Shown here in pieces: positions 3,301-62,500 of a DNA stretch of 64,000 nt. The translations under genes were made by a program, and so were the position numbers. The DNA comes from Heptranchias perlo (Eukaryota): the NCBI RefSeq assembly GCF_035084215.1, contig NW_027138407.1, positions 1,426,001-1,490,000 of the forward strand. The letters run 5' to 3'. The notes under the pieces were generated by a model that searched no databases, had not been told where the DNA came from, and worked only from the letters and a program-made list of their open reading frames with translations. Within the stretch, counting starts at the first letter, position 1; each line of letters starts with the position of its first letter.

Positions 3301-3392
3301 CAGCACACAGCTGACTTTAACGTTGGTTGTCCCAGCAGAGCAGCCCCGGGGCAGATTCGAACTCCTGTTAAACTTGGAGTTACATATCGTCG

Positions 3393-3406
3393 CCACCAGA
3401 GGGCAG
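3393..3406 (+). promoter_or_regulatory. Candidate CTCF site CCACCAGAGGGCAG at the 5' edge of cassette 1
   Basis: Close match to the CTCF core consensus; absent from the paralogous position (~43050). Confidence 0.5.
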
Positions 3407-3968
3407 CGGGAGAAAGTGTTCACTCTGCAAGTTTCAACGTGGGGCCGAGTTCCAGACTAAAAACAATGTTCAGTTACTTTATTTCAGAAAAAAAGATTAA
3501 AGAAGCAGATTCGGAAATAAAGGCATTAATTGCGAATGGAAGTTGAGTTGTGTTTTAATTTTATTATGAATTATTAAAGTATTATAAATTGCAAATACAA
3601 AATATGAAGGTTAGGGACTTTGAAATTAATCTTACAGACACAAAGAACGTCAGAACTCACCAAAAATAACATAAACAGAAGTTTTAATGCAAACCACAGA
3701 AGGGGACGGTGCACGAAGCGACTGTTTAAATTACAGTGACAGTTTATTCTCTATATATATTGTGCATATCTGCCTGTATATTGAAAATGGCACTGGACAG
3801 TCTCATATTGTAACCTGACTCTCAGTTGCTGGACTGAGGGAGCTCTGCATGGTCCGTCGGATGAGAGGTTTAACCGAGGTCCCATCAGCCGGTTCAGGGA
3901 GATGTTAAAGAATCCCCCGGCACTATTGGAATAAGAGCGGGGGGATTCTCCCGGTGTCCTTGGCCAAC

Positions 3969-4268
3969 CCGCGACCTCTACCACCTAGAAGGACAAGAGC
4001 AGCAGGTACATGGGAACAACACCACCTGCACGTTCCCCTCCAATTCACACACCATCCCGACGAGGAAATATATCGCCGTTCCTTCATCGTCGCTGGGTCA
4101 AAATCCTGGAACTCCCTTCCTAACAGCACTGTGGGAGAACCTTCACCACACGGACTGCAGCGGTTCAAGTAGGCGGCTTACCACCACCTTCTCAAGGGTA
4201 ATTAGGGATGGGCAATAAATGCCGGCCTCGCCATCGACGCCCACATCCCATGAACGAACAAAAAAAAC
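3969..4268 (+). mobile_element. 5'-truncated LINE 3' tail inserted only in cassette 1
   Basis: Matches the 3' end of the LINE at 34745-35785, ends in an A-run, and the empty site is seen at ~43600. Confidence 0.8.
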
Positions 4269-4638
4269 TTTCCCCTCATCAAACATCACCCAATAAAAAC
4301 ACATGAAACAACCACCCAGCTCGTTCATGTGAGGCAAAGGAGGCGGTAGCCTCTGCTGACAGAACAACTCCCCCCACCTGTATATCAGACTAATATGGGA
4401 GGGGCTTTCAGATCGGGCTCAGAGACCGATTGAAAAGCCATAAAACTGCAGGTCCGTCTTTAAACCTGTCGCCTATTAACACAGCACACAGCCAGAGATC
4501 CGGGAACCGTGCGGAGTATTAATGATCTCCGGGTCAATGCGTCGTGCAAATGAACTGGATCCCCTAAAGTATTTAAGTACAGCTCCGAGGTACAGCCTCC
4601 CAGGGCAGTCAAGGGCTGCAGTCTCCAGCTTCCCGTCA

Positions 4639-4644
4639 TATAAA
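4639..4644 (+). promoter_or_regulatory. TATA box of NAR-TCR V1
   Basis: TATAAA 30 bp upstream of the leader ATG; conserved at 43972 in copy 2. Confidence 0.65.
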
Positions 4645-4668
4645 CCATCAGCTCCAGGCAGCAGAACA

Positions 4669-4711
4669 ATGGGAATCCTCCTTGTTTTCATCCTGTGTGT
4701 CTATTTACCCC
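4669..4711 (+). CDS. NAR-TCR V1 leader exon (MGILLVFILCVYLP)
   Basis: Hydrophobic signal peptide with a phase-1 GTGAGT donor at 4712. Confidence 0.92.
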
Positions 4712-4857
4712 GTGAGTACCGTTCAACCAAACAGACATTGTGCACATTTAACAGAAAGCTGCCCGAGTCTATCCGAATTGCAGACACGGTCTCAGTTTTC
4801 GCCCCGTTGTGTTGTTCGGCTCTGACGGCTCATTAAACTCTCTGTTTAATTTTCCAG

Positions 4858-5146
4858 GCTCTTTCGGTCAGTCAGTGGTACAGACCCCGGATGCGGTAAC
4901 TAGGAAGGAGTGCCAGTCTCTCACCATCACATGCGTTTTCTGGGGAGGGTTTTTTAAACGTCCTTTAGTGAGTGGGGAATTCTTCAGACAAAGGCAGACC
5001 GGCACAGAGTGGGAGCCGATCAACGGCGGAGGACGATTTGTTACTTCGACGAATACCGAAGAAAAGACGTTTCGGCTGGAAATTAGGGACGCGAGAGTTG
5101 AAGATAGCGCCACTTATTACTGTAAAGCAAAGTACAAGTATGATAA
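4858..5146 (+). CDS. NAR-TCR V1 (IgNAR-like V exon)
   Basis: TTTCCAG acceptor; QSVVQTP..KECQSLTITC..FFRQ..GGRFVTSTN..FRLEIRDARVEDSATYYCKA matches the IgNAR V layout (no CDR2 strands, GGR[Y/F]V motif); extra FR1 Cys as in NAR-TCR; followed by an RSS. Confidence 0.93.
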
Positions 5147-5184
5147 CACAGTGATGGGTCTCGGCTCCCCGTGATACAAAAACT
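5147..5184 (+). promoter_or_regulatory. 23-type RSS of NAR V1 (CACAGTG, 22-bp spacer, ACAAAAACT)
   Basis: Read directly. Confidence 0.95.
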
Positions 5185-5534
5185 CTCACTGCAGATTGTC
5201 ACGGAAACAAATGAAAAAACGGATTTAATCTGCGATTAAACCCAACAGATCCGCCTCGCACCTTCTGCCCCACAATCTAGTTAATAATAAGCTTGGATTA
5301 TTACAGTCAACATTTTGTGTTTTATAAATACGGATTCTGTGCGGATAATGTCTTTCCTGGGATTGGTGTCAATGAATGGCGATTGGGATTGACTGATCCC
5401 ATTTACAAGTCCCTTGCACCAGATGGGATCCTGTTCTAACAGCTGGAACCGAGATCCGCAATCCCCACCGTTTAACTAATGTCCCCGCATATCACCAAGC
5501 ACCGGGGGATTTTATGCTAACTTGAAGTACTGTG

Positions 5535-5548
5535 TTGATTGGGATAAT
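5535..5548 (+). CDS. NAR-TCR D1 (TTGATTGGGATAAT) flanked by two 12-RSS
   Basis: 5': GGATTTTAT-12-TACTGTG (5507-5534); 3': CACAGTG-12-GCAAATACC (5549-5576); conserved in copy 2. Confidence 0.88.
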
Positions 5549-5938
5549 CACAGTGGAAGAGACCTCAGCAAATACCTCTGTACAATTAAAATATCAATTC
5601 TCCCGGCCCGGATCCTGAATTGTAGGTTTGATGTTATTATCGCTGTAATCTGGATTGATTTTATTGCAAATTCCTGCTTTCAGTGATCTTTCTTTGATTT
5701 TTTTTCCGTTTATGTTAAACGCCCATCTCCGGCCCGTGTACCGGGGCCATTTTACAAAGAGCTGAGAGTCTCAGAAAGAAGAGTTTGAAACGACTGGGAC
5801 TGTGAAACATGGAATGTTGTTCATTGATGTAAAATCCCTGGAATAATTGGGCAGCGTGGACTCTATGCTGATGTGTGACCAGCAGATTGAGGTGTCTGTG
5901 GTTCTTGTACAGGGGTGACTGAGAGCGGTGTCACTGTG

Positions 5939-6001
5939 GTGATAATAAATGGTATGATGCTTATGCGGATGGATCCGGGACAGTGGTGACCGTCACAGCC
6001 G
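5939..6001 (+). CDS. NAR-TCR J1 (DNKWYDAYADGSGTVVTVTA)
   Basis: 5' RSS GGTTCTTGT-23-CACTGTG (5900-5938); IgNAR/IgH-like GxGTVVTV; phase-1 GTAAGT donor. Confidence 0.92.
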
Positions 6002-8044
6002 GTAAGTGACTCCAAACCCCGCCGTGTTACAGAGTGCCCCGGTTAATATTCACCGTCAGTTTATTATTGTGATCAGTATCACCTCAATCCCCTTCAAATT
6101 AAAACATAGTGGTTTTCTAAGGGGGCATTTCAATTCCAGTTTGAGATTCCGCACCAGAATATGAACCGGGAGGCGGGTCGTGGTATGAATCCGGAGATAG
6201 GAGTTGTGAGACCCCCACGGAACAGGCAGACAGGGGTTTGACCCCATCAGGACCATCATTGGTTTAACGGGGACGTCGGACTCTTTCTCACTCTGATCCC
6301 CAGTTGGTGTAAATGAGCGCAGATTGTCGACACTCCGGCCTCCGCTCTCGGCGTTAACTGTGACTGAGGGAGATCTGCCTGTCCCTGTGAGCACGGGGGA
6401 AGTTTCAGAGCACTCTCCTGGGCAGGAAATTGCAATCCGAACCGGGCAGTGTGAATGAGGTACCGGTCGAGTAAACCTAACACTACAGCCGCCCATCCGA
6501 TAACAGCAGCGGCAGAAAAACTGGAGCATAACACGGCGGGGCTTCAGGTACAAGAGATCCGCTGTAGGTCCAGGTGGCATTTCATGATTGGACACCCAGT
6601 GACTGAAATTAATTGCATTTTAGCTAATATTTATTTCAATTCCCTTCACATAAACAGTCATTTGTCTCGATGCTCCAGGTTTGAGTCGAAATGTGAAAGC
6701 CTCGAACGACAGACACTTTTCCATATTTAATATCAGTGTTTCAGAGATCGGTTTCCATTAATTTACCTGGAGCCTTGATTAATTTTAATTGAAACAACAA
6801 TGGGCAGTGAGAGACTGAGTGCGAGGCGCAAATATTCTAATAAAGGAGAACAGGAACACCCGAGGGAACAAGTACAGGCTGGAGAAAAGTCCATTGAGAA
6901 CCAGCAAGAAATAATTCACTGAAAGGGAGCGAAATATCGCCCATAGCCGGTCAAGCGGGAATGTGGAGACACCGACCCCTGGGCCGTTCAAAGTACAATC
7001 CGGCACCGGTGGACTTACATTTACCGGAGGGATGGGCTTCGATTGGGCTCCGGGACTTTTCTCAGCTTTGCATTTCTTATACTCCTGAGAAAAGATATCA
7101 GCAGCAATCCACACCAATCTGGAAAGATTGAACAGGCCGGGGCTCTTTTCTCTAAAATAGAGAAGAGTGCGAGGAGACCTGATAAGAGGTCTTTAAAATT
7201 ATGAAGGTGTTCGATAGGGTGGATGTGGGGAAACGATGTCCACTTGTGGGTGAATCCAGAACAAGGGGTCATAAATATAAGACAGTCACTAACAGTAAAG
7301 TAAAGAATTTTTGAGGAATTTACTTACACAGAGAGTGGTGAGAATGTGGAACGTGCTGCCACATGGAGTGGTTGAAGCAGATAACATTGACACATTTAAG
7401 GGGAGGATTGAGACATACATGAGGGAGAAAGGAATAGAGAGATACGGGGTGGGGGGGGGGTCAGGGTGGAAAATGGTAATTAGAGTTGGCGGAGGGTCGT
7501 TTGGAATCTAAACGCCGGCATAAACCAGTAGGGCCGAATGGCGTGTTTCTATTCTGCAGGTTCAGTATATTGTAAAACTCAGAGAAAACTCCGCCCGGAG
7601 AGATTCAACCAATGCTCTGAAGGAATTGACATTATTAGAGAGTAGGAAGAGACAGTTCCCAGTGAGTAACAGTAAAACGACTGCGGAAACTGCACAGACT
7701 GATCCCACGGATCAATGAGAGACTCTGGGACAAGTTCTCAGGGTGGCGGGAAACCTCAAACAGCAGAGAGCGAGCGATCCTGGTGTAGACATAAAATGAA
7801 AGTTACTATAGAATCTGCTCCCACCGCCCTTTCAGGCAGTGCATTCCAGATCATAACAACTCGCTGCGTAAAAAAACATTCTCCTCATCTCCCCTCTGCT
7901 AATTTTTCCAATGAAAGTAAATAAAGTTCGAACGGGCTTCAAATGAAGAACAACATTACCGCTAGAGGCATATCAATTCATGCGATTGACAAGTGTCGAA
8001 ACTGCAGCTAAAGAAATACTAATCTCCCAATTTTTATCCTGCAG

Positions 8045-8355
8045 ATTCCAGTTTATCTGTGTCCCAGAGATTGCCTCGACAAACCTCTACTGCCGGTGAC
8101 ACCGTTACTATAAGTTGCGAATATTCAGGGCTCTGTCAGTACACAGTGCAATGGTACCGTCGGTGCCTATGGCAGGCTCCGAAATACCTCCTACAGAGAC
8201 ACACTTCAGGAGAAGGGAATAATGAAAACGCTGCCGGGGGCCGAATTTCTGCTTCTATCGATCCTACCGAGAAAACCAGCCGGTTAATTATCTCCAAATT
8301 ACAACTGAGTGACTCCGCTGTGTATCTCTGTGCACTGAGTCCGCGCACCGATACA
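8045..8355 (+). CDS. NAR-TCR supporting TCR-delta V1 (leaderless, CDR1 Cys)
   Basis: TTTTATCCTGCAG acceptor in phase with NAR J; TISCEYSGLCQYTVQWY..LQLSDSAVYLCALSP; no leader exon found between NAR J and this exon; RSS CACAGTA-24-ACAATAACC at 8356-8395. Confidence 0.9.
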
Positions 8356-8690
8356 CACAGTAGTTTGAGTCTGCTTAAGTGGTCGTACAATAACCTCCCA
8401 CCCACACAGAACGGTTCAACAACATTCTCAACACTCCCAGGAAGGTTTGGTTCCAATCCAGCAACGTTTACCCCCGGACCCTTACCGTTTTACATTCTGT
8501 TCATTTTGCAATTTTATTTCCCCTGGATATTTATTGCTGTGATCACATTGCGGGAACGCTCCAAGACCGCCAATGCATAAAGACATGACTCGTAAGCTTA
8601 CTAGTTCTATCCTTCAGGAACAAGCGAATCAGTTACTGGGAGATGTGGAGGAGATTCCTAGTGATCTTTTTACAAGATTCAACGATATGT

Positions 8691-8751
8691 AACATTAGGC
8701 GACAAGAAAAGTTCACGTTTTGGAATGGAAACAGGCTGATTTTGAATCCCT
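8691..8751 (+). pseudogene. J-delta a, pseudo (KFTFWNGNRLILNP)
   Basis: J-like motif with FGxG changed to FWNG; degenerate heptamer GATATGT; GTAAGT donor. Confidence 0.65.
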
Positions 8752-8867
8752 GTAAGTATCAACTCCTCAATTTGGTCTCTCTCTCAACAACTTCTTTTAC
8801 TAATTGGAGCCTTATTTTTAGTTATATTTATACATAACCGTTATATTTTTACATAACAGCATTAGTT

Positions 8868-8918
8868 GGGTGATAAGCTGATATTGGGAACTGGGGAACT
8901 GATAGATTGTGCAACGGG
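8868..8918 (+). pseudogene. J-delta b, frameshifted (DKLILGTG...)
   Basis: J-like start, frameshift, GTAAGT donor; the paralog at 47713-47768 is also frameshifted. Confidence 0.6.
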
Positions 8919-9226
8919 GTAAGTAGATTTGTGTCTTCTTTATCTCAATTCACGGCGGTTTCGTGTGTGATGCAAAGTTAGGGTCTATCCCTTCAACTGA
9001 CATTAAGCCCTTAGCACGAACACACACGTATGCACTGGAGGGAGACCTTTCACTGACCTGCGTGTGTAACGGCGAAAGACAATTAAGCAACACTTCGAAA
9101 GATATCCAGGAGGTAATTCAGCAAGATGGGGCCACGATCTAAGCCCCTGGTGCTTCTATTAAGCTACAGTCCAGACAGTTTACAGCCCTCTTGGAACAGG
9201 TTTCTGTCTGTTCAGCTGTTAATGTG

Positions 9227-9292
9227 CAGGATGTTGGCAAACTACCACTAAACTAATATCTGGAAATGGGACCAGAATTATTTTAGAAACGG
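9227..9292 (+). CDS. J-delta c, open frame but non-canonical (GCWQTTTKLISGNGTRIILET)
   Basis: 12-RSS GGTTTCTGT-12-TAATGTG (9199-9226); FGxG changed to SGNG; GTAAGT donor. Confidence 0.75.
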
Positions 9293-9537
9293 GTAAGTAA
9301 AATGTAAGGATATTGTCTCGTTCTTCCTCTTGTAGACACGTGTTTGCCTTCTGGTGAATATTGGTAGAGGGACCAGGTATCTATTATTAAATTGCGGTGA
9401 GGATAATTTTCCCCATTTACAGGGGTTTGCGGTACCCAGTTCGCTTTTCCAACAACGTGTCCACTTTCTGCTGCGATGAGGTGGAATTAGACCTGGTGGC
9501 GCTGTGCGGGTTTTACAGCTGGGTACTTATCACTGTG

Positions 9538-9599
9538 TGGATTAGGGGATGCTGCTGAACTAACATTTGGAAACGGAACTGAAGTGATTGTAGAGCCAA
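9538..9599 (+). CDS. J-delta d, canonical (GLGDAAELTFGNGTEVIVEP)
   Basis: CACTGTG heptamer at 9531 with a 12/13-bp spacer and GGTTTTACA nonamer; FGNG motif; phase-1 GTATGT donor. Confidence 0.9.
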
Positions 9600-10230
9600 G
9601 TATGTAATATTTAAACACATTACTCGTCCTTTTGTAACAATAGAAGACGCATGGCATGTGGTATCTGCTAATTATGGGCGGACGAGTCGGTTAACGGTTT
9701 TTAGAAAGAAATAAACAAAGAACGAAAGATTTCCATGTAAATCGCGCCTTTCGCTACCTCAGAACGTCTGAAGGCGCTTTATAACCAATGAAGTACTTTA
9801 AAAGTGTGCTCACTGTTGTAATGTAAGAAACCCGGCAGGCAATTTGCTCACAGCAAGGTTTGACAAACAGCGATGTGATAATGACCAGATAATCTGAAGC
9901 TTTCCCCTTCAAATCAGACGCAATTTTCCAGCGATTATGCGAGAGTATACATTATTTCCATAAAGATAATAAATAGGATTCAATTGAGACTTTTACTCTA
10001 TCCGCATATCCGCGAGGGAAAGGAAACCAGCGGTGGCTTCAGTGTCTGCCGAATCATTCCAGATGTTGCTTGTTGAATCATTACTCCAGGATTAATATAG
10101 GGGGCCTTAAATCATTGCAAACACATTGAATATTTGAGACGTTGTGTTGTGTTCCCATTTATTTAGTGCAGGACATGAAGAAATTTGCAGATGTGCATAG
10201 ATTGGCCATTTTTAAAAATTTAACACCGTG

Positions 10231-10294
10231 TACGGCGGTGGATATACAGATGTTCTTACGTTTGGAAATTGAACCTTGTTCAGTGTAGACTTGA
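10231..10294 (+). pseudogene. J-delta e, pseudo (YGGGYTDVLTFGN*TLFSVDL)
   Basis: CACCGTG heptamer at 10224; in-frame TGA in the FGxG motif, shared with copy 2. Confidence 0.75.
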
Positions 10295-11184
10295 GTGCTT
10301 TCAAATAGCCCCTGTCTCATAATCATGAATTGCAAAAAAAAAGTAATCTAGATTCACAGGTCATTGTGCGCTATTTTGCGATCAATGTACGTTTAGATAT
10401 TATGGGTTGGATTTCTCTCGCAAAAGCCAACCTCACACAAGCACAGCTAATCCGTAAAACCCCAATTATCTGATCCCGTGAATTGTGTTGTTTCATGGAA
10501 TTGAACCAGTAATCTACATTTGATGGAAAAAAACAGGAAATAACATTTTTATGGAGGGAACTGGAGTCAATGGGTTCAGATACGTTTGCCTCATTATCTA
10601 AGGATTTGAGCAACTAACATTTTTACGAGGCGTCATTAATTTAAAATATCCACTAAGGGGAGGGAGATGAGAGAAATTTCTGTGAACAGAGTTATTGGAA
10701 AATTGGATGTTTTTGAACAGGGAATGGTTGAGGGTTTTTAAATGATGAAAGGATTTGACAGGGTAGATAGAGAAATACTAATTCCTCTGGTGGGGGAGTC
10801 CAGAACAAAGGGGCATAATCTTAAAATTGGAACTAGGCCGTTCAGTGGTGATGTCAGGAAGCACTTCTTCACACAAAGGGAAGTGGAAATCTGGAACTAT
10901 GTTGAGGCTGGGGGTCAATAGAAAATTTCAAAACTGGGATTGAAAGATTTTATTAGGCAAGGTTGTTAAGGGTTCCGGTACCAAGGCGGGTAAATTGAGT
11001 TAAGACATAAATAAGCCATGATCTTATTGAATAGCAGAACAGGCTCGAGCGGATGCTTTTTAAAAAAATATGTGTGGACTATTATTTTATTATCGAATGT
11101 CATTATTAGTCATTTATAGATCTACCACTGTGCTCACATTGATGAATTCTGAACAGTTTTCCCGTTCTATTCTTTAATTTTCAG

Positions 11185-11505
11185 AGGACAAAACTCCGAA
11201 AGAGCCAACCGTGTCGGTCTTTTACCCGCCCGTGATACAAAATGGGGACGGGGACAGTGCCGATACGGTGGCGGTATGTCTGGTGTCGGAATTCTCCCCC
11301 AAGGAGATTGGGCTCTTCATGGATACGATCACTGTCCCAAAGACCAATGTCACGAGATCCAGTCACTTATTGAACAACGGGTATTACAGGAGCTCAGGGT
11401 TCCTCTCTTTCAATTCATCCAAACAATCAGTAAATGTCACGTGTGAGGCAAGACATAGGGCTCAATCTTTCTATGCAAAACGCGACAGCCAGGATTCTGC
11501 AGCCG
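11185..11505 (+). CDS. TRDC: TCR delta-type constant region exon 1 (Ig C1 domain), cassette 1
   Basis: TTTTCAG acceptor; PTVSVFYPP..AVCLVSEFSPKEI..YRSSGFL..VTCEARH with both Cys; GTGAGT donor; position downstream of NAR-TCR and supporting V implies delta. Confidence 0.85.
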
Positions 11506-11530
11506 GTGAGTAATAAAATGTTTCATAAAT

Positions 11531-11985: not shown

Positions 11986-12157
11986 ATAATCGAAGGCCGA
12001 CTGTGATCAATAATAGGATGAAGAATCAATACTGCTACTTTGTTATTACTTCCTCCATTATTACTACCAGTAACGATAATAATAACAGTGATAATAATAA
12101 CGACAAAGCAACAACAAAGTAACTTACTCAATAAATCCTTTACATGTTTGTTTGCAG

Positions 12158-51753: not shown

Positions 51754-51931
51754 GTAAAAGGCAGACAGGCAGAAAAAAATATAAATAGATAGATACCTAG
51801 ATTAATGTATACTAGCCAGCTAGATAGATAGAGCAATACATTCCAATTTTTTGTTACAGAAATATTTATTTCAGTGAAATACAGTGGGCTTGTTTAACTA
51901 AATAAACACTTTAATTTGATAATTATTACAG

Positions 51932-52041: not shown

Positions 52042-54799
52042 GGTAAGATTGATCACCCCAATGCACATGCAGAATATCATTTGTTATTCACAATATTGTT
52101 CGTAATAAACATGGCAATTAATAAAGTAAATCTCTCGATTCCCATTGCTATAACCGGAGGCCGACCCACAACGACACTGTTGCACCAGACACTGAGAATA
52201 GTCTTGTACGATTTGGGGGTGAAATGCAACTTCGGCGTGGGTGCAAAATGGCAGGTTGGGTATTGGCCTCCGCTTATACACTCTGTCCGATTTTCCTTTG
52301 CCATGTTGTACAATGATCAACCGATCCCTCTACTGCCCAATTTTGCGACCCATCGAAGTTCAATTTTAACCCCTTTGTCTTCTGAAAGTTGTCCAGATTT
52401 GAAACATTTCTAATGTATTTCTGTGCCACGTTAGTTTCGCCAAGTCCATCATCAATAACTCCGCTCATGCCTTTACAAATCTACTCATTTTCTGTTGCAC
52501 CTCTTCATTGCTTGAATATCCAGTTTTAAAACAAGATGCCCACAGATGCACACATTATTCCAGTTGAGGCCCAAACAACGTTTTGCAAAAGTGCATCATC
52601 AGCCACTTGGTATGATGAGCCTTCTTGTTTAAACTAATCTTGTCCTCAAATCCCTCCATGACCTCGCCACTCCTTATCTCCATAACCTCTTGCAGCTCTA
52701 CAAGCCTCCAAGAACTTGACGTTCCTCCAATTCCCGCCTCTTGTTTATCCTCCACTCCCTTCGCCTCACCATTGGCGGCCGTGCCTCCAGCTGCCTAGAC
52801 CGTGAGCTCTGTAATTCCCTCCATAAACCTCTCCGCCTCTCCATACCTCTCCTCCTTGAAGATCGTCCTCAAAACCTGCCTCATTGACCAAGCTTATGGT
52901 CACCTGAACTTAAATCTCCTTATGTGTCTAATTTTGTTTGAAGACGCTGCTCTGAAGCGCCTTAGGGCGTTTTCCTATGTAAATGGCGCTCTGTAAATGC
53001 AAGTTGCTGTTATTCACGTTACAGCATAAATTCTGTCATTGACACTACTTTCAAATATCTGTCTATCTCTAACCCCTGGATCTCTCGGTTTCTCTGCTTG
53101 ATCATAATTCGGCTTATATTTCCATTCTCGATTCTTTTCCCCCAAACATGTTCGAGCTCACACAGGTCAACGATTAGCTCCCTTTGCCATATATCTCCCC
53201 GCTCTTCTGAACGACGCATGTCCTCCTGCAGTCTGCCCTATTTTTTCCGCCATGTCCACACCCCAAAAATTATATGGTCAGCAAATTTGATATCTCCTTC
53301 ACGCCTATATCCAAATCAAGCATTTCTATGAATAACAAGAGAGGTACAAACACCAAATGTGTTCACACCCCACCAGCCACATATTGCTGGACTGAAAAAT
53401 AACATTAACCACTGTTAATTTCTAATCTTGAGCCATTTCCGAGAACAGATTGCATAAACATGGCCTGTATTCCATTGAGTATCGAAGATTGAGGGGTGAT
53501 CTGATCGAGTTGTTTGAAATGTTAAAAGCAGTCGACAGGGTAGATGCAGAGAAACTATTTCATCTGGTGAGGGAATCCATAATGAGGCGACATAATTTTA
53601 CAATTAGAGCTAGGAAATTTAGAAGGGAAATCAGGAAGCATTTTTTCGCACAAAGGGCAGTAGAAATCTGAAATTGACTCTCCCAAAAGGCTGTGGATGC
53701 TGGGGAACAATTGAGCTCTGAAGACTGAGACAGATAGATTTTTGTTAGATAAGTGTATCAAGGGATATGGAGCTGAGGTGGGAAAATGGCGTTGAGGCAC
53801 AGATCAAACATGATCTCATTAAATGGCGGCCTTGGCTAGAGGGGCTCAATGACCTACCCCTGTTCCTACTGTTCCTATCTTCGATACTGGCCCACAAGGT
53901 CCTGGTACGCAATTCCACTGCCATCTATGTTTATAGGCTATAACATGAACTCAATTGACAGAGAATGCAACTCTATACATTCATCGTCGCTGAGTCAAAA
54001 TCCTGGGCCTCGCAACCTAACAGCATCATGTCAGTCCCTTCAGCGCGTTGGCTGCAATGGTTCAAGAAGAAGGCCCATCACCACCTTCTCAAGGGCAACT
54101 AAGGATGGGCTGTAAATGCCGGCCTTGCCAACGATGCCCAAGGCCCGAGACTTTTTTTCAAACTGCATTTTAACAGTTGAATGAAAATATTGCTCAGGAA
54201 ATTTTGACATAGCAACTTACAATGATAACTATATGCCTATCAGGAAACGCTGAACAGGCTGGGCCACTTTCCTTGAGACAACAGAAGCCTGAGGTGTGGA
54301 CTGATAGAGGCCTTTAGGATTATGAAAATGCTTGATAGGGTAGACGTAGAGAAGATGCTTCCACTCGTGAGGGAGACAAAGTCGAGGGGTCATAAATAAA
54401 AGATAGCCACCAACAAATCCAATCGGGAACTCAGTAGAAATTGCTTAACCCAGAGAGTGGTAAGAATGTGGAACTCGCTATCGCTTGGAATAATTGAGGC
54501 AAATAGCATAAGTGCATTTAAAGGGAAGCTGGATAAGTACATGAGGGAAGATGGAATGGAAGGTTATGTTGATTGGCTGAGATGAAGAATGTATATTAAA
54601 TCTATGTAATATAGATAGTCGAACAGAAGCAAACTATATGGATGCGTTCAATATTTGAGAATTTGCACAGCACAATTTTCCAAGGTGGAGAGTTAGAGAC
54701 TGAAATACATTCGTCATCTAAAAGTGCTCTTTTCACGTACACTGTTCAATGTAACTTCTTGCAATCCACTCATTACTACTGGTGCTTTTATTCAAACAG

Positions 54800-55760
54800 G
54801 AATTCTCTCCGATCAAATGGATTCCAGCGTGAGCACAACCCATTGGGAATCCAGTGCCCTTGACATCGAGTTCAGCTGACTCAATTTACTTTAGTTCAAT
54901 TTAGCAGGTTTTAAACGGCTAATTCTGTGTTGCTGGAACTGTTGAACTTTCTTCTTTAGGAAACATTTGTTCAATTTCTGTGACATATTTTTATAGTCAT
55001 AGTTTTGTGGAATGCTCATTGCATATATTAGGTAAACAAATTAAATGAATGAAAATCATAGATTTAAATATATAGAGCTCGCAATTATGTTTTTATGCTT
55101 GAATTAGTCAAAAGAACAGTTTCAAAATAGCACTTTAGCTTCAAATAATTACAGAATTTTACATGCTTTTCTTAGTATCATTGAATTTTACGGCACAGAC
55201 TGAGGACATTGGGCCCATCGTGCCGGTCCCGGCTCTTTAAAAGTGCTATCCAATTAGTCAAACTCACCCTGCTCTTTCCCCAAACACCTGCAAATGTTTG
55301 CTTTTCTCTGATAGTTATTTTAATTGCAGTTTGGTTTTATTTTATATCATTTAAAAGCGCCCGATGCATTTCTTTGATAGACATCTGTCTGCATTGGAAA
55401 CAAACCGTTCAACTCAAGCGTTGTATCTGAATTGTTACCAGGAAGGTGAGTTTTAAAATATCCCGTAGCTATTCTCTCGTTCTGGTTTTAATGTCATTCT
55501 TTCTTTACCATTTTGGGGAAGAGATTTTCTCTGGTCGCCTCGCATTAGCTCCGTGGTAAACGTGGAGAGAAGTTACCCTCTGTTTGCGATTGGCAGCGAG
55601 TGGGCACTGTCTTGTTCTCCTGTCATCGTTTTCTCCTTGATTGTTTGGTTGCACATCAATTAATTATTATTACATTTGGTAACTTTAATGAGGCGAAATT
55701 TCAAATCTATTTTTCCCACTTGTAACGCAATGAGAATAAAGGATTTACTTTTGGTCAACA
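54800..55760 (+). other. Probable C exon 4 (3' UTR), cassette 2
   Basis: TTCAAACAG acceptor; AATAAA at 55735; paralogous to 15377-16330. Confidence 0.55.
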
Positions 55761-58379
55761 TATCGAATGAGTTGCCTTTCTCTTTGAATATTAAGGGGAA
55801 CTTTGGGGGGTCCCTAATCTAAAATTATTTTACAATACTAAAGTCTCCGGCGCTCGATCAGTCATCAATTTTAATTTTTCCATCGGTTTATTTTAAATTA
55901 AGCGGTAGCAGAAGGGTTAATTGACTGTAAGCTCCTTGTTTCGACCACAACTGTTAAGAGCTAACGGTTCACGAGTTGTATCTTGACTGGGCAAGCCAGA
56001 GCTCCGTTGACAAGGCAACCAAGGGCAGCAGGAAATGCGTTGAAGGTGCGATTTCAGCGAACACGGTCTCGGAATCTGTCAGTTTGAACACATGGGCAAA
56101 CTGCGGTTTTATCGCCTGGGGCTGGAATCGAAAGCAGCGGGGTGGCAGTTTGGCGGTGAGGGGGGGGCGAATGTTGCAATGAGCAAGAACAAAAAATAAT
56201 AGCAACATTAACAAGGGACTTTCTGAGCAACACGGATTGAGGCAGGTTGTTTTTTTAAAGCATCAATTTTATCTGTTATTTAGACTGCAACGAAAATCAA
56301 TCAAAAAACACATGGCCAGGTTGCACTCCTGTGAATGCACTTGTTGGTTACCAGAAATCATAGAATCATACAGCACATTCGGCCCATCGTGTCCATGCCG
56401 GCTTTTTGAAAGAGCTATCCAATTAGTCCCACTCCCCCCTGCTCTTTCCCCATCGCCCTGGAAATATTTCCTTTTCAAATGTGTATCCAATTCCCTTTTG
56501 AATGTTACAATTGAACCAGATTCCACGACTATCTAAGGCAGTGCATTCCAGATCTTAACATCCCACTGCGTTAAAAAATTCTCCTCATTTCCACCGGATT
56601 TTCTTTGCTAATTATCCTAAATCTGCGTCCTTTGGTTACCTACCTTTCTGTCACTGGAGACAGTTTCACCCTATTTAATCTATCAAAACCCCTCATCATT
56701 TTGAACACTTCTATCAAATCTCCCCTCAACCTACTTTGTTCTAAGGAAAACCACCCCAGTTTCTCCAATCTCCCCACAATCTATGAAGTTATTGGCTGAA
56801 GTAACATTAAAATGTAAAGTCTGAATGCAGCCATACAGTATACTTGCGTCAGCCTGTTTATATACTTTACTCAAGATATTACCGAACTTAAAATTTTAAT
56901 TGTTACATGGTCGTCTGCTTCCACAAAGGATATTTAGGAGCAAATCCTTCTCAGTCCCCAAAATCCTTCCCTTCCTCCTCAAATCCATATAGACGTGGTG
57001 AGTACAAATTCCACCATTGGCAATTTGTGAAACTGAATTTTAAAAACATCTGTTAATTTGCGAGCTAGCACCAGATTAAATTACACTGAAAACAGCGGGA
57101 TTGTGGTAATAACCGAAATGGGCCACTAACGCCTTTCAGGGGACCGACCTGCCCCAATGCAGAAACAGAACATTGCGGAAACACTCAGCAGGTCAGGCAC
57201 GATCTATCGGGAGAGAAACAGAGTTAACGTTTCAGGTCGATGACCTTTCATGAGAACTGGAACATGTTGCAGACGAACAGTACAGAGCCAGGGGATAAAA
57301 GTTTGTAGGCGGAGAGGGGTTGGTGGTGCAGGGAAAGAACAAAAGGGAAACTCTGTGTTCAGATGGAGCGGCAGGAGATGGTTAAATGAGAAAATGGATG
57401 ATGGTGTAAGGCAAAAGGTAATGGGACAAGTAAAGAAAACAATAAAGGTGGGTCTGGAGGCGGTGTCACTGCTTACAGTAGAATAGCAGAGGCGGAGGGA
57501 AGCATGGAAATCCGGCCCGGGGGTGAAGGCTCCCGTGGCCCTGGATTATGGAGGAAGAAAGGCAGTTGGACCCCACCCCGCCGGCCGATAGGGGTTCCCT
57601 ATCCATTCGGTACTACACTTGACTTCAACCACACAGTAAGCTGTTGCCTCTGAATGTCCTCGGGGAACTAGGGATGGGCTGTAATTACTGTCATATCAGG
57701 AAGTGAACCCGTCTCCTTGTCCCTCCATTGAAATTAGTGGAACAAAAATCCGGCGGGTTCTGTTCTGGGCTTTCCAGCCATTCAGACAGATCTCCTTTAC
57801 TGTGCTCCATCCGGGCGATAATTAAAGGCCAGAGGGTAAAGGCTAAAAGCTAGTTACAATCTCTTCGTTTTTCATAAATCATCGCATTTTGCAACACATA
57901 ATATGGTCATTCGGTCGGCTGTCTTGTTATTTTACATAGAATTTACAGCACAGAAACAAGCCATTCCGTCCAACTAGTCTATACCGGTGTTCATGCTCCA
58001 AACGAGCCTCCTACCTCCATGAGTAATCTCACCCGAACGACAAACCCTTCTATTCCTTTCCGCCTCATGTATTTCTCTAGCTTCCCTTTAAATGCATCTA
58101 TGAATTTTAAGAGTTATCCACCAATTCCCTTTATCCTGTACTTGCCCAGGCCACTTTTTCAGATTTCATTATTTCCCGGTTTTCCTTTGAATGCCATGAT
58201 GAATTTTATATCATTATTTTCATCACTGTTTCTGCCAGAGTATTCTGACTATCATCCCCTAGTATCTTCGTTCGTTTGGTACATAGAATTTACAGCACAA
58301 ATACAGGCCATTCGGCCCAACTGGTCTGTGCCGATGTTTATATTCCACACGAGCCTCCTACCACCCTACTTAATCTTGT

Positions 58380-59500
58380 ACTATAGAAACACAGAAAATA
58401 GGAGCAGGAGTAGGCCATTCGGCCCTTCGAGCCTGTTCCGCCATTCAATATGATCATGCCTGATCCTCTCTCCCCATACCCCTTGATGCCTTTTGTGTCT
58501 AGAAATCTATCCAGCTCCTTCTTAAATATATTCAGTGACTTGGCCTCCACAGCCTTCTGTGGTAGAGAATTCCACAGGTTCACCACCCTCTGAGTGAAGA
58601 AATTTATCCTCATCTCAGACCTAAATGTCCTACCCAGTATCCTGAGACTGTGTCCCCTCGTTCTGGACCCCCCTCCCCAGGGGAAAGATCCTCCCTGCAT
58701 CCAGTCTGTCTAGCCCTGTCAGGATTTTATATGTTTCAATGAGATCCCCTCTCATTCTTCTAAACTCTAGTGAATACAGGCCGAGTCGACCCAATCTCTC
58801 CTCATACGACAGTCCTGCCATCCCAGGAATCAGTCTGGTGACCCTTCGCTTCACTCCCTCGATGGCAAGTATATCCTTTCTTAGGTGAGGAGTCCAAAAC
58901 TGCACACAATACTCCAGGTGTGGTCTCACCAAGGCCCTGTATAACTGCAGTAAGACATCCTTGCTCCTGTACTCAAATCCTCTTGCAATGAAGGCCAACA
59001 TACCATTTGCCTTCCTAACTGCTTGTTGCACCTGCATGTTTGCTTTCAGTGACTGGTGTACAAGGGCACCCAGATCCCTTTGTACATCAACATTTCCCAA
59101 TCTATCACCATTTAAATAATACTCTGCCTTTCTGTATTCCTTCCGAAGTGGATAACTTCACATTTATCCACATTTCACTGCATCTGCCATGTATTTACCC
59201 ACTCACTCAACTTGTCTAAATCGCCTTGAAGCCGCTTTGTATCCTCCTCACAACTCACGATATCAGCTCGTTTTGTGTCGTCAGCAAACTTGGAAATATT
59301 ACATTTGGTTCTCACCTCCAAATCATTGAAATATATTGTGAATAGCTGGGGCCCAAGCACTGATCCCTGCGGTACCCCACCAATCACTGCCTGCCACCCC
59401 GAAAAAGACCCATTCATTCCTACTGTCTGCTTCCTGTCTGTTAACCAATTTTTAATCCATGCCAGTATATTACCACCAATCCCATCTTCTTTAATTTTGT
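58380..59500 (-). mobile_element. CR1-type LINE, 5'-truncated (RT C-terminus and tail)
   Basis: GVPQGSVLGP..KFADDTK and LVRPHLEYCVQFW motifs (ORFs 59175-59417 and 58630-59100). Confidence 0.9.
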
Positions 59501-62500
59501 CATATCATCATATCCTTCCCATCCTTTCTCCCTCATGTATTTATCTAGCTTCCCCTTAAATGCATCTATATTATTTGCCTCAACTACTCCTTGTCGTAGC
59601 GAGTTCCACATTCTCACTACTCTCTGAGCAGAGAAGTTTCTCCTGATTTTTTTGTGGTGATATTAAATTAAAACCGTTTAGTTATTGACAGGTCGGCCAT
59701 TGGTAATATTTGGCCCCAATTTAACTTCTGAAAGCTTCTAGTAAAACAAGCTCCTGTTTCAATCTTTCTTTTAAAATATGCAAGGATTTACTTTAATATT
59801 GAAGCAGAAAAAAGTCATGGTCACTTGTTTTTTCTTCTGGACACCAAGACATCCAGAAAACAATAAAATTTAAACGTTGAACTTAACATAACAAAGAAGA
59901 AACAATAAGAGGAAATAGAAACGTTAAGAAAGAATGAAAGAAGGATGGAAGGTGAGAAAGAAAGAGAAATAAACAAATGAAGAAAGAAAGATGGACAGAA
60001 TGAAAGAAAAAACATGCAAGATTTTGTATTGTGCTATTGCCAGGACAATTCAAATAATCTAATTTCATACTCTAGTTCGTGCATTTATCAAGACGAGAGT
60101 CTGAATTGAAAGCGGATATGGTGGTCCAGTACTTGGAGATTAGAGTTAATCCAAAACAGAGTGTGCAGTGAGCTCAGCTGCTGCAAGTAGCTTAGTGCAA
60201 CAGTGTCGCATCTGTAATATCATTGATTGGCAGTCATGGCGTAGAATGACAAGCCTAAGCAGAAAACATAAACGCCTCACTTGTTAGAATCTTGAAGCAC
60301 AGAAGGAGGCCCTTCAGCCCATCGAGACTGTGCCGGCCTTTTTAAGAGCTTTCCAATTGGTACCACTCAACTATTCGAACCCCACAGCCCTGCAAGTTTC
60401 TCCTTTACAAGTAGATATCCATTTCTGTTTTGAAAGTTTCGATTGAATCTGCTTCCACCACCCTCTCAGCCAATGTATTCCAGATCACAACAACTCGCTA
60501 CATTAAAAAAATTGCTCGTCAAAACGTCATAATTTTCAACACCTCCATTAAATCTCCCCTAAACTTTCTCTGCTCTAAGGAGAACAACCCCAGTTTCTCC
60601 AGTCTCTCCACATAACTGAAGTCCCTCATACGTGTTACAATTTTTATAAATCTCTTCTGCAACATCTCCAAGGCCTTGATATCCTTCCTAAGGTGTGGTG
60701 CCCAGAATTGGACTCAACACTACTGCTGAGGCCTATCCAGTGATTTATAAAGGTTGAGCATCCGTCCTAAGCCTTGCCCCATTCAACCCCAAATGCATTT
60801 GAATCAAGAAGATATATTAATAATCTGAAACCCCGAATCCCCCTTTATGGACCCACAGTTCCTTTATAAAAATGCAAAATACCCCAGAATTCATTACTTT
60901 TATTGATAGTTTGCTTTCCGTATCCAGTATGTGGCGGCGGTTGACCGGGAGTTGGGGGGGGGGCGTTGGCGGGGGACTGGGGTGAATAGCAGTTGGAGCT
61001 TTGTTTCCATTATGTGCGAACTAACTGATCAGTAACGATGAGAAACCAGTTTTTTTAGATGAACAGTTCTGGATCGCGCAACATTTTGTACACGTTTCCT
61101 CTCTACTTTTGTACTGTGATATGCGTGTTGGGCGCCCTCTATTGGCTGCCAGTTGCTATGGATGACATGCATTTTGAAAGTGAATGGTCGTGCACATGGA
61201 ATGGATTTAGAAACGTCTCCTGAAGTTATATCTTTCACTCTGCAATTGAACACTTGAATCTTTACAGGTTTTATGCTCCATGCTAACCGATCAGGTTATA
61301 CCTCTCAGCAAAGATTGAACAGGCTGGGCCCTTGTCTTTAATCCGTGTCCTCTGGTTACCGACCCTCCGACCAGTTGAAACATTTTCCGCCTATTTTCTC
61401 TATCAATACCCTTCGCACCTTTCAGTGCTGGTAGAAATAATTGCTGCGTCGTCAATTTGGGGACAGTAAACTTAATAGATTTCTATAGCCAAATGTTACA
61501 CAGAAATGCAATTCTTGTTTATGCATTATCCCTAATATCGTAGAATTATTGAATGTTACAACACAGAAGGAGGCCATGTGGCCCATCGTGCCTGTGCCGG
61601 CTCTTTTCAAGAGCGATCCAATTAGACAAACTTCCCCCTGCTTTTCCCCATAGCACTGCACTTTTCACCCTTCGAGTATTTATCCACTTCCCTTTTGAAA
61701 GTTCCCATTCAATCTGCTTCCACCACCATTTCAGGCAGAGCATTTCCAGATAGTAATAACTCGCTGAATAAAAAAAAATCTCCTCATCTCAACTCTGGCT
61801 CTTCTGCCTATTACCTTAAATACTGCAACCCTTCTGCTGGTGGAAATAGTTTCTCCCTATTTACTCTATTAAAACCCTTCATGGCATTGAACACCTCTAC
61901 CAAATCTCCTCTTGACCTTCTCTGCTCTAAGGAGAACAATCCCAGCTTCTCCAGTCTCTCCACATAACTGAAGCCTCTCATACCTGGTACCATTCTCGTA
62001 AATCTCGTCTGCACTTCCTCAAATATCTTACAATTTTCTGTCCAAAGATACCGCACTCCGAAATAATCCATTGTTCCTGAAGAACTCTGAGTGGTTTCTG
62101 TGAGACGTGAGAATCGATGGCACAAGTCAAAGCTTTTTCATTCTATTTTTGCTGTAATGCGCTGGAGTTTAAAATAGTTTCAAATTATCACTGCAAAGAT
62201 ATGATTTCTTCCTTCCTTTCTTCTTTCCTTCATTTTCATTTCTTCCAGTTACACCCTAAGATAAGATTAATTTATACAATCTAGAGAGACGTTTTACTTC
62301 AAAGGGACAATAAAGTATTCCTGCACTTGAAGGCAAATTAAAATATATTCTATATTTTACATGCAAGATCAGTAATACGCGGTAGGTATCTACAGACCCC
62401 TGTGTTGATTGTCTCGACAATTAATTATGTTGAGTCCGCTCTTTATTTGTAAATTAAATTCTGATGCCCAGTCTATATCTGAAGCGTCACGAGGGACATG

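What the first reader, a model, noticed from the sequence alone, without database searches (positions are those of the whole stretch)
3310..62487. NAR-TCR organised as duplicated self-contained clusters, each with its own J-delta set and C-delta gene
Seen: two ~20-kb copies of L-V(NAR)-D-J / V-delta / J x5 / C exons 1-4. Cassette 1 splice phases all join in frame into a two-V-domain chain. Established: NAR-TCR is a shark TCR-delta chain with an extra IgNAR-like V on a leaderless supporting V-delta. As I recall the described shark loci, the NAR-VDJ plus supporting-V units sit in the V array and rearrange to the shared D-delta/J-delta/C-delta. Inference: here NAR-TCR has become a multi-cluster mini-locus with private constant genes. 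That layout matches shark Ig clusters and converges on marsupial/monotreme TCR-mu (V-D-J-V-J-C clusters), and could amount to a distinct TCR chain isotype.
Basis: partly seen in the sequence, partly recalled or inferred. Interest (0 to 1): 0.95.

Follow-up and report, generated by a model that had tools for sequence, protein, structure and literature searches.

The report
Duplicated shark NAR-TCR clusters with own constant genes
Two diverged tandem copies of a complete shark two-V-domain T-cell-receptor delta gene sit here, each with its own joining segments and constant gene, and the first copy is rearranged, transcribed and spliced to its own constant gene, which departs from the usual picture of one shared delta constant gene.

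Summary
Window 3307-23864 and 42968-62487 are tandem copies, 85.0% identical over 17,697 aligned columns, with 10 private indels of 80 bp or more. Each copy carries leader, NAR V, D, NAR J, a leaderless supporting V-delta, five J-like elements (one canonical) and C exons 1-3. Exon 4 is not verified.

The window is Heptranchias perlo. RefSeq model P0021 maps at 100% to cassette 2 exons.

Contigs of RNA-like runs from the same animal show:
- three different supporting-V to J joins at the recombination signals;
- a GT..AG J-to-C-exon-1 splice (9599 to 11185);
- exon 1 running on into cassette-1 exon 2;
- a rearranged cassette-1 NAR V-D-J.

So cassette 1 uses its local C.

The C genes are delta type. 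They carry the CLXXXFXP signature, and the best named hits are ray and skate TRDC.

A separate isotype is not supported. The C domains group by species, and in Mustelus asterias NAR-linked and other C genes intermix. "Private" use of the C genes is not shown either.

Cassette 2 has lost its hinge-exon donor.

The scan noted the same layout at four other places on this genome piece; one of those was followed up.

I found no text describing local C genes for NAR-TCR. The primary NAR-TCR papers and the supplements could not be read.

The parts
3307..23864 (+). Duplicated unit 1 (cassette 1 gene plus about 11 kb of repeat-rich tail)
   Evidence: blastn self-comparison; MAFFT alignment, 85.0% identity
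4669..4711 (+). Cassette 1 leader exon (ATG; donor GTGAGT; phase 1)
   Evidence: sequence read
4858..5146 (+). Cassette 1 NAR V exon. It has a Cys in the a-b loop (KEC) and no canonical Trp (EFFRQ).
   Evidence: Pfam V-set E 1.7e-07; best solved-structure matches are shark VNAR, E 1e-14
5147..5184 (+). NAR V recombination signal: CACAGTG, 22-base spacer, ACAAAAACT
5507..5576 (+). NAR D (5535-5548) flanked by 12-spacer signals on both sides
   Evidence: paired-signal score 27 of 32
5900..6001 (+). NAR J: 23-spacer signal (heptamer 5932-5938) and coding 5939-6001 (DGSGTVVTVTA). Donor GT at 6002, phase 1.
   Evidence: RNA-like contig laid at 5943-6001; the unaligned letters before it are the cassette-1 NAR V end plus 9 extra letters.
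8045..8355 (+). Supporting V-delta exon: no leader, splice acceptor, Cys in CDR1 (SGLCQY)
   Evidence: Pfam V-set E 2.4e-13
8356..8395 (+). Supporting V signal: CACAGTA, 24-base spacer, ACAATAACC
   Evidence: V-J joints begin at 8352/8354
8709..8751 (+). J-like element a (FWNGNRLILNP), degenerate; donor at 8752
8872..8918 (+). J-like element b (LGTGE), degenerate; stops in the phase-1 frame
9198..9292 (+). J-like element c: weak 12-spacer signal (TAATGTG) and coding 9227-9292 (KLISGNGTRIILET); donor at 9293
   Evidence: not seen used
9509..9599 (+). Canonical J-delta: 12/13-spacer signal (heptamer 9531-9537) and coding 9538-9599 (AELTFGNGTEVIVEP); donor GT at 9600
   Evidence: Three V-J joints end at 9538, 9541 and 9542, and the splice joint runs 9599 to 11185.
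10224..10297 (+). J-like element e, pseudogene (TFGN*T: stop inside the motif)
11185..11505 (+). Cassette 1 C-delta exon 1 (C1-set domain; CLVSEFSP)
   Evidence: Pfam C1-set; HMMER hits; RNA-like contigs cover 11202-11506 with 0 other letters
12158..12229 (+). Cassette 1 C exon 2 (hinge, KPDCGK)
   Evidence: the unaligned letters after 11506 in run X5 read as the start of this exon
12436..12546 (+). Cassette 1 C exon 3 (transmembrane LGLRVLFLKCVAFNVLLTARVW; stop 12543-12545; a donor follows)
   Evidence: 97% identical to the end of P0001
15377..16313 (+). Candidate exon 4 (3' untranslated), NOT verified: conserved acceptor-like site and conserved AATAAA
   Evidence: no RNA evidence
42968..62487 (+). 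Duplicated unit 2 (cassette 2)
44002..44044 (+). Cassette 2 leader exon
44190..44482 (+). Cassette 2 NAR V exon, open frame; signal at 44483
   Evidence: Pfam V-set E 2.3e-11
44863..44876 (+). Cassette 2 NAR D between two 12-spacer signals
45264..45326 (+). Cassette 2 NAR J
   Evidence: P0021 residues 1-26 match at 100%
46922..47232 (+). Cassette 2 supporting V-delta; signal at 47233
   Evidence: P0021 matches at 100%
48404..48465 (+). Cassette 2 canonical J-delta (heptamer 48397-48403)
50554..50874 (+). Cassette 2 C-delta exon 1 (ends DSLYCAA, with a new Cys)
   Evidence: identical to P0021 over the domain
51669..51740 (+). Cassette 2 C exon 2. The donor is deleted relative to cassette 1.
   Evidence: RefSeq model P0021 goes from exon 1 straight to exon 3
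51932..52042 (+). Cassette 2 C exon 3 (transmembrane; stop 52039-52041)
38509..39008 (+). Intact conventional V-alpha/delta between the cassettes: leader 38509-38554, V exon 38664-38969, 23-spacer signal at 38970
25907..30128 (-). Conventional V segments on the opposite strand: 25907-26365 and 29670-30128 are open with signals; 27262-27489 is truncated
62834..63415 (-). Conventional V segment after cassette 2, opposite strand; signal at 62987

Best explanation
The window, from the sharpnose sevengill shark Heptranchias perlo, holds two old, diverged tandem copies of a complete, self-contained NAR-TCR delta gene.

In each copy a leader and an IgNAR-like V join a D and a J by the 12/23 rule (V-23, 12-D-12, 23-J). 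That J is spliced to a leaderless supporting V-delta exon. The supporting V (23-type signal) joins directly to one canonical J (12-type signal) without a D. That J is spliced to a delta-type constant gene 1.6 kb downstream: an Ig domain, a hinge with the pairing cysteine, and a transmembrane exon with the Arg/Lys pair.

Shown for cassette 1: rearrangement of both V units, J-to-C splicing, and exon 1 to exon 2 splicing.

Inferred: the leader-to-V and NAR-J-to-supporting-V splices, pairing with TCR-gamma, and surface expression.

Cassette 2 has all parts open, but its hinge-exon donor is deleted. It can only make a hinge-less chain (exon 1 to exon 3, in frame) or is decaying.
For: - The duplication is real and old: 85.0% identity with 10 private indels of 80 bp or more.
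- Recombination signals sit exactly at the coding ends. No D-like paired signal lies between the supporting V and J in either cassette, while the control NAR D scores 27 of 32.
- Runs X5 and X6 are labelled 'RNA? (a guess)'. Runs X5-X7 give zero depth in 13 unique intron bins where DNA run X1 has 9.7-23.4.
- In the same call, X5 and X6 show three distinct supporting V to J joins: 8354 to 9538 with 4 extra letters, 8352 to 9542 with 6, and 8354 to 9541 with 6. By my count of lengths, 2 of the 3 are in frame.
- X5 shows a GT..AG joint from 9599 to 11185 (2 contigs, depth 100.7).
- RNA-like contigs cover 11202-11506 with 0 other letters.
- At 11506 the unaligned letters that follow read as cassette-1 exon 2. 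At 5943 the unaligned letters before read as the cassette-1 NAR V end plus 9 letters.
- None of these joints is present in DNA run X1.
- RefSeq model P0021 maps at 100% to cassette 2.
- The C is delta type: it has the CLXXXFXP signature of PMC10322711 (passage read), and its named hits are TRDC of Hypanus and Leucoraja.
Against: - All runs are contigs from one animal, the same sample as the DNA and perhaps the assembly source. Contigs cannot link NAR V, supporting V and C on one molecule or give expression levels.
- The NAR-J to supporting-V splice is not among the listed joints.
- One of the three V-J joins is out of frame.
- The shorter side of the J-C joint is only 26 letters, so an identical C copy elsewhere in the genome is not excluded.
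- dN/dS between the two C exon 1 copies is 0.65, from 8 synonymous and 18 non-synonymous changes, which suggests relaxed constraint.
- No RNA test was possible for cassette 2, because the single read-laying run was used on cassette 1.
Confidence: 0.8

Rival explanations
1. The local C genes are not private to NAR-TCR. TCR-delta in this shark would be a multi-cluster locus whose J-C units are also used by conventional V segments lying between the clusters. This overlaps the best explanation and differs only on exclusivity.
For: - An intact conventional V with leader and 23-type signal lies on the + strand at 38509-38969, 9.4 kb upstream of cassette 2's 12-type J.
- Pristiophorus P0002 and Rhincodon P0027 join a conventional V to a C of this family.
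- Mustelus models P0023 and P0025 have non-NAR upstream parts, yet their C lies among the NAR-linked C domains on the tree.
- No separate conventional C-delta of H. perlo turned up in 3 protein searches.
Against: - No read or contig here shows a conventional V joined to these J segments. One search covered only 5935-11530.
- Most neighbouring V segments are on the opposite strand.
- The protein searches are limited by word and length filters and by clustering, so absence of a conventional C-delta is not shown.
Confidence: 0.35
2. The cluster C genes form a distinct TCR chain isotype, a shark counterpart of TCR-mu, that separated long ago from conventional C-delta.
For: - The layout V-D-J-V-J-C in tandem clusters is that of TCR-mu (PMC2275272 and PMC7615758, passages read).
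- The three H. perlo C copies form their own clade with support 99/97.
- No TRAJ array follows either C within about 11 kb.
Against: - The C carries the TRDC signature, and its named hits are TRDC.
- The tree groups C domains by species, not by NAR linkage. In Mustelus, NAR-linked and other C domains differ by branch lengths of 0.01-0.05.
- No conventional H. perlo C-delta was available for comparison.
Confidence: 0.1
3. The local C genes are decaying relics, and working NAR-TCR chains use a shared C-delta elsewhere.
For: - The cassette 2 hinge-exon donor is deleted.
- dN/dS is 0.65 for C exon 1.
- Three or more of the five J-like elements are degenerate.
Against: - The J-to-local-C-exon-1 splice, exact-match exon 1 contigs and the exon 1 to exon 2 continuation are all seen for cassette 1.
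- All cassette 1 exons are open with intact splice sites.
Confidence: 0.05
4. The two copies are an assembly or haplotype artefact.
For: None found. All the DNA contigs come from one sample, which may be the assembly source, so they are not independent support.
Against: - The copies are 15% diverged with 10 private indels of 80 bp or more.
- The NAR V copies are only 71% identical in protein.
- Cassette-1-specific RNA-like contigs exist, and there is a separate RefSeq model for cassette 2.
- DNA contigs at 97% or more cover 30 of 30 bins of the stretch laid.
Confidence: 0.02

Closest known systems
NAR-TCR (doubly rearranging TCR-delta of cartilaginous fish; Criscitiello et al. 2006, known to me here only through passages in PMC1845163, PMC5931798, PMC12227049 and PMC2275272)
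   Same: - IgNAR-like N-terminal V with a leader, an a-b loop Cys and no canonical Trp.
- Leaderless supporting V-delta with a CDR1 Cys.
- Two separate rearrangements.
- A delta-type C.
   Different: [quoted passage not shown] Here each NAR-TCR unit has its own J set and C gene.
- The supporting V joins J without a D.
TCR-mu clusters of marsupials and monotremes
   Same: - Tandem V-D-J-V-J-C clusters.
- Three extracellular domains.
- The platypus supporting V also lacks D segments (PMC3457774 passage).
- Derived from TCR-delta.
   Different: - The N-terminal V of TCR-mu is VH-related, not IgNAR-related.
- Marsupials have a germline-joined supporting V.
- The cited papers state an independent origin. 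Homology to TCR-mu was not tested here.
Shark immunoglobulin miniclusters (V-D-D-J-C)
   Same: Repeated short self-contained V-(D)-J-C units, each with its own constant gene (PMC1845163 and PMC12227049 passages).
   Different: - Here the constant gene is a membrane TCR-delta type, with a transmembrane exon carrying Arg/Lys.
- There are two V units per cluster.
- The clusters are embedded among conventional TCR V segments.
Second TCR-delta locus of birds (VH-delta-D-J-C cluster outside TRA/TRD; PMC3457774 and PMC5278385 listings/passages)
   Same: An extra C-delta copy in a compact cluster with an antibody-like V.
   Different: - In birds it is a single V domain in a separate locus.
- Here there are two V domains, many copies, and the clusters lie inside the V array.

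Membership tests
NAR-TCR | The N-terminal V is related to IgNAR V, with a leader, a Cys in the a-b loop and no canonical Trp of WYRK (features as listed in PMC1845163) | tested here: met
   - The best solved-structure matches are shark VNAR, E 1e-14.
- Leader exons lie at 4669-4711 and 44002-44044.
- KEC and EFFRQ are present in both copies.
NAR-TCR | The supporting V-delta lacks a leader, is entered by a splice acceptor and has a Cys in CDR1 | tested here: met
   - An acceptor lies at 8044/8045 and no leader is present.
- SGLCQY / SGLCPY is present.
- Phase 1 matches the NAR J donor.
NAR-TCR | Two independent V(D)J rearrangements make one chain | tested here: met
   - Signals are present for both units.
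- RNA-like contigs show the NAR V-D-J junction and three supporting V-J joins.
- That both lie on one molecule was not shown.
NAR-TCR | The constant region is TCR-delta | tested here: met
   - CLVSEFSP fits the TRDC signature CLXXXFXP and not the TRAC signature CLXTD (PMC10322711).
- Named hits are TRDC of Hypanus (E 2.2e-09) and Leucoraja (E 7.7e-07).
Canonical TRA/TRD translocon | The order 5'-TRDC-(TRAJ)n-TRAC-3', with one C-delta shared by all V-delta | tested here: not met
   - There are two C-delta genes in 64 kb.
- No J with FGXG plus a donor lies in the roughly 11 kb after either C.
- The rest of the locus could not be seen.
Cluster-type antigen receptor locus (Ig minicluster / TCR-mu type) | Tandem repeats of self-contained V-(D)-J-C units, with the local C used by the local V | tested here: met
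   - Two units are present here.
- The local J-to-C splice is seen for cassette 1.
- Exclusive local use was not tested.
TCR-mu | Orthology of C and V to mammalian TCR-mu genes | not tested
   No TCR-mu sequence was compared. The cited papers state convergence (PMC3457774, PMC7615758).
New TCR isotype | C genes form a lineage apart from conventional C-delta across species | tested here: inconclusive
   - The tree of 22 rows groups C domains by species, and Mustelus NAR-linked and other C domains intermix.
- No conventional H. perlo C-delta and no C-alpha were in the tree.

The most novel reading that the evidence does not exclude
In the sevengill shark, and perhaps in sharks generally, TCR-delta is not a translocon with one constant gene. 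Instead it would be a field of Ig-like miniclusters. Every C-delta gene would sit in a V-D-J-V-J-C unit scattered through the V array, and conventional delta chains would be made by neighbouring V segments joining the cluster J segments. That would be a living intermediate between cluster and translocon organisation of antigen-receptor genes.
Probability: 0.25. Interest if true: 0.85.

Novelty: new variant of a known kind. Interest (0 to 1): 0.7.

Why it matters
- NAR-TCR is cited as the shark analogue of marsupial TCR-mu at the protein level. Local J and C genes in repeated clusters would extend that convergence to the gene layout.
- It would show that a TCR locus in the oldest jawed-vertebrate lineage can use the cluster organisation thought typical of shark immunoglobulins.
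- It gives a concrete, testable system: several diverged C-delta copies, one of them naturally hinge-less. This could be used to ask how cluster and translocon loci interconvert, and how two-V-domain receptors are regulated and paired.
- Six gene models in Mustelus asterias and one in Cetorhinus maximus have the same domain order. This suggests the layout may be widespread across both shark superorders. Their loci could not be inspected.

Tried and rejected
**Searches and look-ups that gave little or nothing**

- The search for homologous proteins with C exon 1 alone gave nothing because of its length filter. The HMMER search of representatives and two searches using the C part of public models P0001 and P0002 replaced it.
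- A solved-structure search with C exon 1 gave only antibody constant domains, so it does not separate delta from alpha.
No other tool holds shark DNA, so those models stand as protein models only, and the distance between their V and C is unknown.
- A conventional C-delta or C-alpha of H. perlo was not found. Three protein searches and scan-note searches turned up none. This is not evidence of absence.

**Features not settled**

- Exon 4 was not established.
- A D between the supporting V and J was looked for and not found.

**Readings rejected**

- Artefact, relic and separate-isotype readings are rejected or down-weighted, as set out under the rival explanations.

**Literature**

- Six searches were run.
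- Passages were read in PMC12227049 (also the whole of section 6), PMC7615758, PMC6795676, PMC3457774, PMC1845163, PMC2275272, PMC5931798, PMC10787021, PMC3964593, PMC10322711, PMC12698447 and PMC3149040.
- None states that NAR-TCR units have their own C gene.
- Not held, so unread: PMC1458790, PMC7909615, PMC3222143, PMC7039070 and PMC3805090.
- Supplements are closed. Table S1 and Fig. 1 of PMC12227049 and Supplementary Note XI of PMC3964593 may already show several TCR-delta C genes.

**Joining of exons**

Searches, Pfam scans, dN/dS and the tree were all done exon by exon.

Full report
**What is there**

The window has no N. A blastn self-comparison shows that 3307-23864 and 42968-62487 are collinear copies in the same orientation. 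A MAFFT alignment gives 15,043 identical of 17,697 aligned columns (85.0%), with 10 indels of 80 bp or more that are private to one copy. This is far too diverged for haplotypes or a collapsed assembly.

**Anatomy of cassette 1**

Read from the sequence, with the recombination-signal scan:
- Leader exon at 4669-4711.
- NAR V at 4858-5146, followed by CACAGTG, a 22-base spacer and ACAAAAACT.
- A 14-base D at 5535-5548 between two 12-spacer signals.
- NAR J at 5939-6001 behind a 23-spacer signal, with a phase-1 donor.
- A leaderless supporting V at 8045-8355, entered by a phase-1 acceptor and followed by CACAGTA, a 24-base spacer and ACAATAACC.
- A canonical J at 9538-9599 behind a 12/13-spacer signal.
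- C exon 1 at 11185-11505, exon 2 at 12158-12229 (hinge, KPDCGK) and exon 3 at 12436-12546 (transmembrane with Arg and Lys, stop at 12543, then a donor).

All junctions are phase 1, so the chain reads in frame. That the Arg/Lys spacing is the CD3-assembly motif is recalled, not tested.

**Anatomy of cassette 2**

Cassette 2 has a counterpart of every part, all open. About 14 bases that include the exon-2 donor are missing.

**Domain checks**

- Pfam calls V-set in 4 of 4 V exons and C1-set in 2 of 2 C exon 1 translations. The 35-residue transmembrane exon had no hit.
- The NAR V finds shark VNAR structures first, at E 1e-14.
- The supporting V finds V domains in general, including a human V-delta-1 chain.

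**The J set**

Five J-like elements lie between the supporting V and C in each cassette.
- One is canonical (FGNGT).
- One is near-canonical (SGNGT in cassette 1, FRSGT in cassette 2).
- Two are degenerate.
- One has a stop inside the motif.

A scan for paired signals found no D between the supporting V and J in either cassette. The same scan scored the NAR D 27 of 32.

**Species**

- C exon 1 found 16 proteins at E up to 0.001 among 1.84 billion representatives.
- The best hit, P0001 (92% identical), and P0021 are RefSeq models of Heptranchias perlo on one 1,715,135-base contig.
- P0021 maps at 100% to cassette 2's NAR J, supporting V and J-like element c. Its C exon 1 domain is identical to cassette 2's. 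Its C end matches exon 3 at 51901-52038, and it goes from exon 1 straight to exon 3.
- P0001 matches nothing in the window above 95%, so it belongs to a third cluster.
- H. perlo is a hexanchiform, in Squalomorphii.

**Expression**

- Eight runs of one sample hold parts of 5935-11530. Four are DNA-like and four are labelled 'RNA? (a guess)'.
- I laid X5, X6, X7 and DNA run X1 on 5935-11530 at 97% likeness.
- The three RNA-like runs have zero depth in 13 unique intron bins (6122-7056, 8553-9487, 10049-10609), where X1 has 9.7-23.4. They do have depth on NAR J, the supporting V, J and C exon 1. So they behave as RNA.

They show the following:
- Three different supporting V to J joins that begin at the V coding end and end at the J coding start: 8354 to 9538 with 4 extra letters (X5), 8352 to 9542 with 6 (X6), and 8354 to 9541 with 6 (X6). 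By my count of lengths, the two X6 joins are in frame and the X5 join is not.
- A GT..AG joint from 9599 to 11185 in X5 (2 contigs, depth 100.7). This is exactly the predicted J donor and C exon 1 acceptor.
- Contigs covering 11202-11506 with 0 other letters. The two cassettes differ at 26 codon-level changes in this exon.
- After 11506, unaligned letters that read as the start of cassette-1 exon 2.
- Before 5943, unaligned letters that read as the end of the cassette-1 NAR V plus 9 letters. This is a rearranged NAR V-D-J.

None of these joints occurs in X1, which covers 30 of 30 bins.

Limits of this evidence:
- These are contigs from one animal, perhaps the one the assembly was made from.
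- They show no single full-length molecule.
- The NAR-J to supporting-V splice is not among the listed joints.

**Which constant gene**

- Both copies read CLVSEFSP. This fits the TRDC exon 1 signature CLXXXFXP and not the TRAC signature given in PMC10322711 (methods passage).
- Named hits are 'T cell receptor delta constant' of Hypanus sabinus and Leucoraja erinacea. Other hits carry automatic names.
- No FGXG J array follows either C within about 11 kb, so these are not in the canonical TRDC-(TRAJ)n-TRAC position.

**Isotype question**

- I built a maximum-likelihood tree of the C exon 1 domain with 22 rows. These were the 2 window exons and 20 public proteins, with no C-alpha. P0012 and P0020 were left out as too short, and P0006, P0010 and P0013-P0017 as non-TCR or redundant.
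- The tree puts the four H. perlo rows in one clade with support 99/97.
- It places Mustelus C domains linked to NAR V among those linked to other upstream parts.
- So there is no sign of an old, separate NAR-TCR constant lineage. No conventional H. perlo C-delta was available for comparison.

**Other species**

- Local blastp of the four window exons against the fetched proteins shows NAR V, supporting V, C and transmembrane parts in that order in 7 of 29 proteins.
- Six are from Mustelus asterias (P0003, P0019, P0022, P0026, P0028, P0029), on six contigs. One is from Cetorhinus maximus (P0005), which also has further V domains between.
- Mustelus is a carcharhiniform, in Galeomorphii.
- These are gene models only.

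**Evolution of the copies**

Divergence is uneven:
- 7053-8451, the intron upstream of the supporting V plus the supporting V itself, is 95-100% identical.
- The background is about 85%.
- The NAR V core is 77%.

By exon:

| Exon | dS | dN/dS | Changes (synonymous / non-synonymous) |
|---|---|---|---|
| Supporting V | 0.027 | 2.14 | 2 / 13 |
| C exon 1 | 0.118 | 0.65 | 8 / 18 |
| NAR V | 0.438 | 0.49 | 20.8 / 41.2 |

The numbers are small. The pattern fits a recent conversion over the supporting V and faster change in the antigen-binding NAR V.

**Context**

- Between and after the cassettes lie conventional V-alpha/delta segments, mostly on the opposite strand: 25907-26365, 29670-30128, 40680-41126 and 62834-63415.
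- One intact V with a leader lies on the + strand at 38509-38969.
- By the 12/23 rule, that V could join cassette 2's J. This is why 'private' is not established.

**Earlier notes of this scan**

- The scan lists the same layout at 259 kb (inverted), 215 kb (followed up), 131 kb and 33 kb before this window. I could not test these.
- Notes on this window agree with what I found: a single canonical J with no D, the lost hinge donor in cassette 2, and a new Cys at the end of cassette 2's exon 1.

**Literature**

- The passages I could read describe NAR-TCR as using the C region of TRD (PMC2275272).
- They describe it as encoded by the TCR-delta locus (PMC5931798).
- They place V-NAR clusters in the TCR-delta loci (PMC3149040).
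- They describe shark TCR-alpha/delta as a translocon (PMC12227049 section 6; PMC6795676).
- None mentions local C genes.
- The primary NAR-TCR papers and all supplements were unreadable here, so prior description cannot be excluded.

**Verdict**

This is a real, expressed, duplicated NAR-TCR delta cluster with its own J set and C gene. It is a new variant of a known receptor's gene organisation. It is not shown to be a new isotype.

Noticed in passing
window 7053-8451 versus 45986-47328: This tract covers the intron upstream of the supporting V plus the supporting V itself. It is 95-100% identical between the cassettes, against a background of about 85% (7253-7451 is 100%). The supporting V has dS 0.027, against 0.118 for C exon 1 and 0.438 for NAR V. 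It looks like a recent gene-conversion tract.
   Followed up: partly
window 51669-51780 and 50855-50874: Cassette 2 lacks the hinge-exon donor. RefSeq model P0021 goes from exon 1 to exon 3, which stays in frame and drops the hinge Cys. Cassette 2 exon 1 ends DSLYCAA, with a new Cys.
   Followed up: partly
window 38509-39008 (+): An intact conventional V-alpha/delta with leader, open V exon and a CACAGTG-23-ACAGAAACT signal lies between the cassettes, in the same orientation as cassette 2. It could in principle join cassette 2's J.
   Followed up: partly
window 8338-8355 and 47215-47232: The supporting V coding end runs five codons past CALS (PRTDT) before the heptamer. This is longer than in the neighbouring conventional V segments (CALR + 1-3 codons). 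It may be a remnant of a germline-fused D.
   Followed up: no
window 7805-7991 and 10797-10983: These are very high-copy repeats. Summed contig depth is 17,000-200,000 and 11,800-60,500 respectively in all four runs. Many spurious DNA joints link 7205-7352 to 10794-10860, so the same repeat family lies in both introns.
   Followed up: no
window 30348-30896, 41435-41917, 1350-1919, 27556-27837: Tandem arrays: a 54-base unit x 9.9, a 150-base unit x 3.2, a 14/27-base unit x 41/19, and (ATC)n x 94. The 54-base array has an inverted partial copy at 42798-42971, just before cassette 2 begins.
   Followed up: no
window 36490-36687 (-), 37095-37391 (+), 39723-39896 (-), 63856-63999 (-): Further weak V-like matches (28-42% to the supporting V part of P0021). 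They are probably V fragments or pseudogenes; the last is cut by the window end.
   Followed up: no
proteins P0003, P0019, P0022, P0026, P0028, P0029 (Mustelus asterias) and P0005 (Cetorhinus maximus): Public gene models with NAR V, supporting V, C-delta and transmembrane parts in order. The six Mustelus models lie on six different contigs. This hints that many C-delta copies linked to NAR-TCR units exist in a carcharhiniform too.
   Followed up: partly
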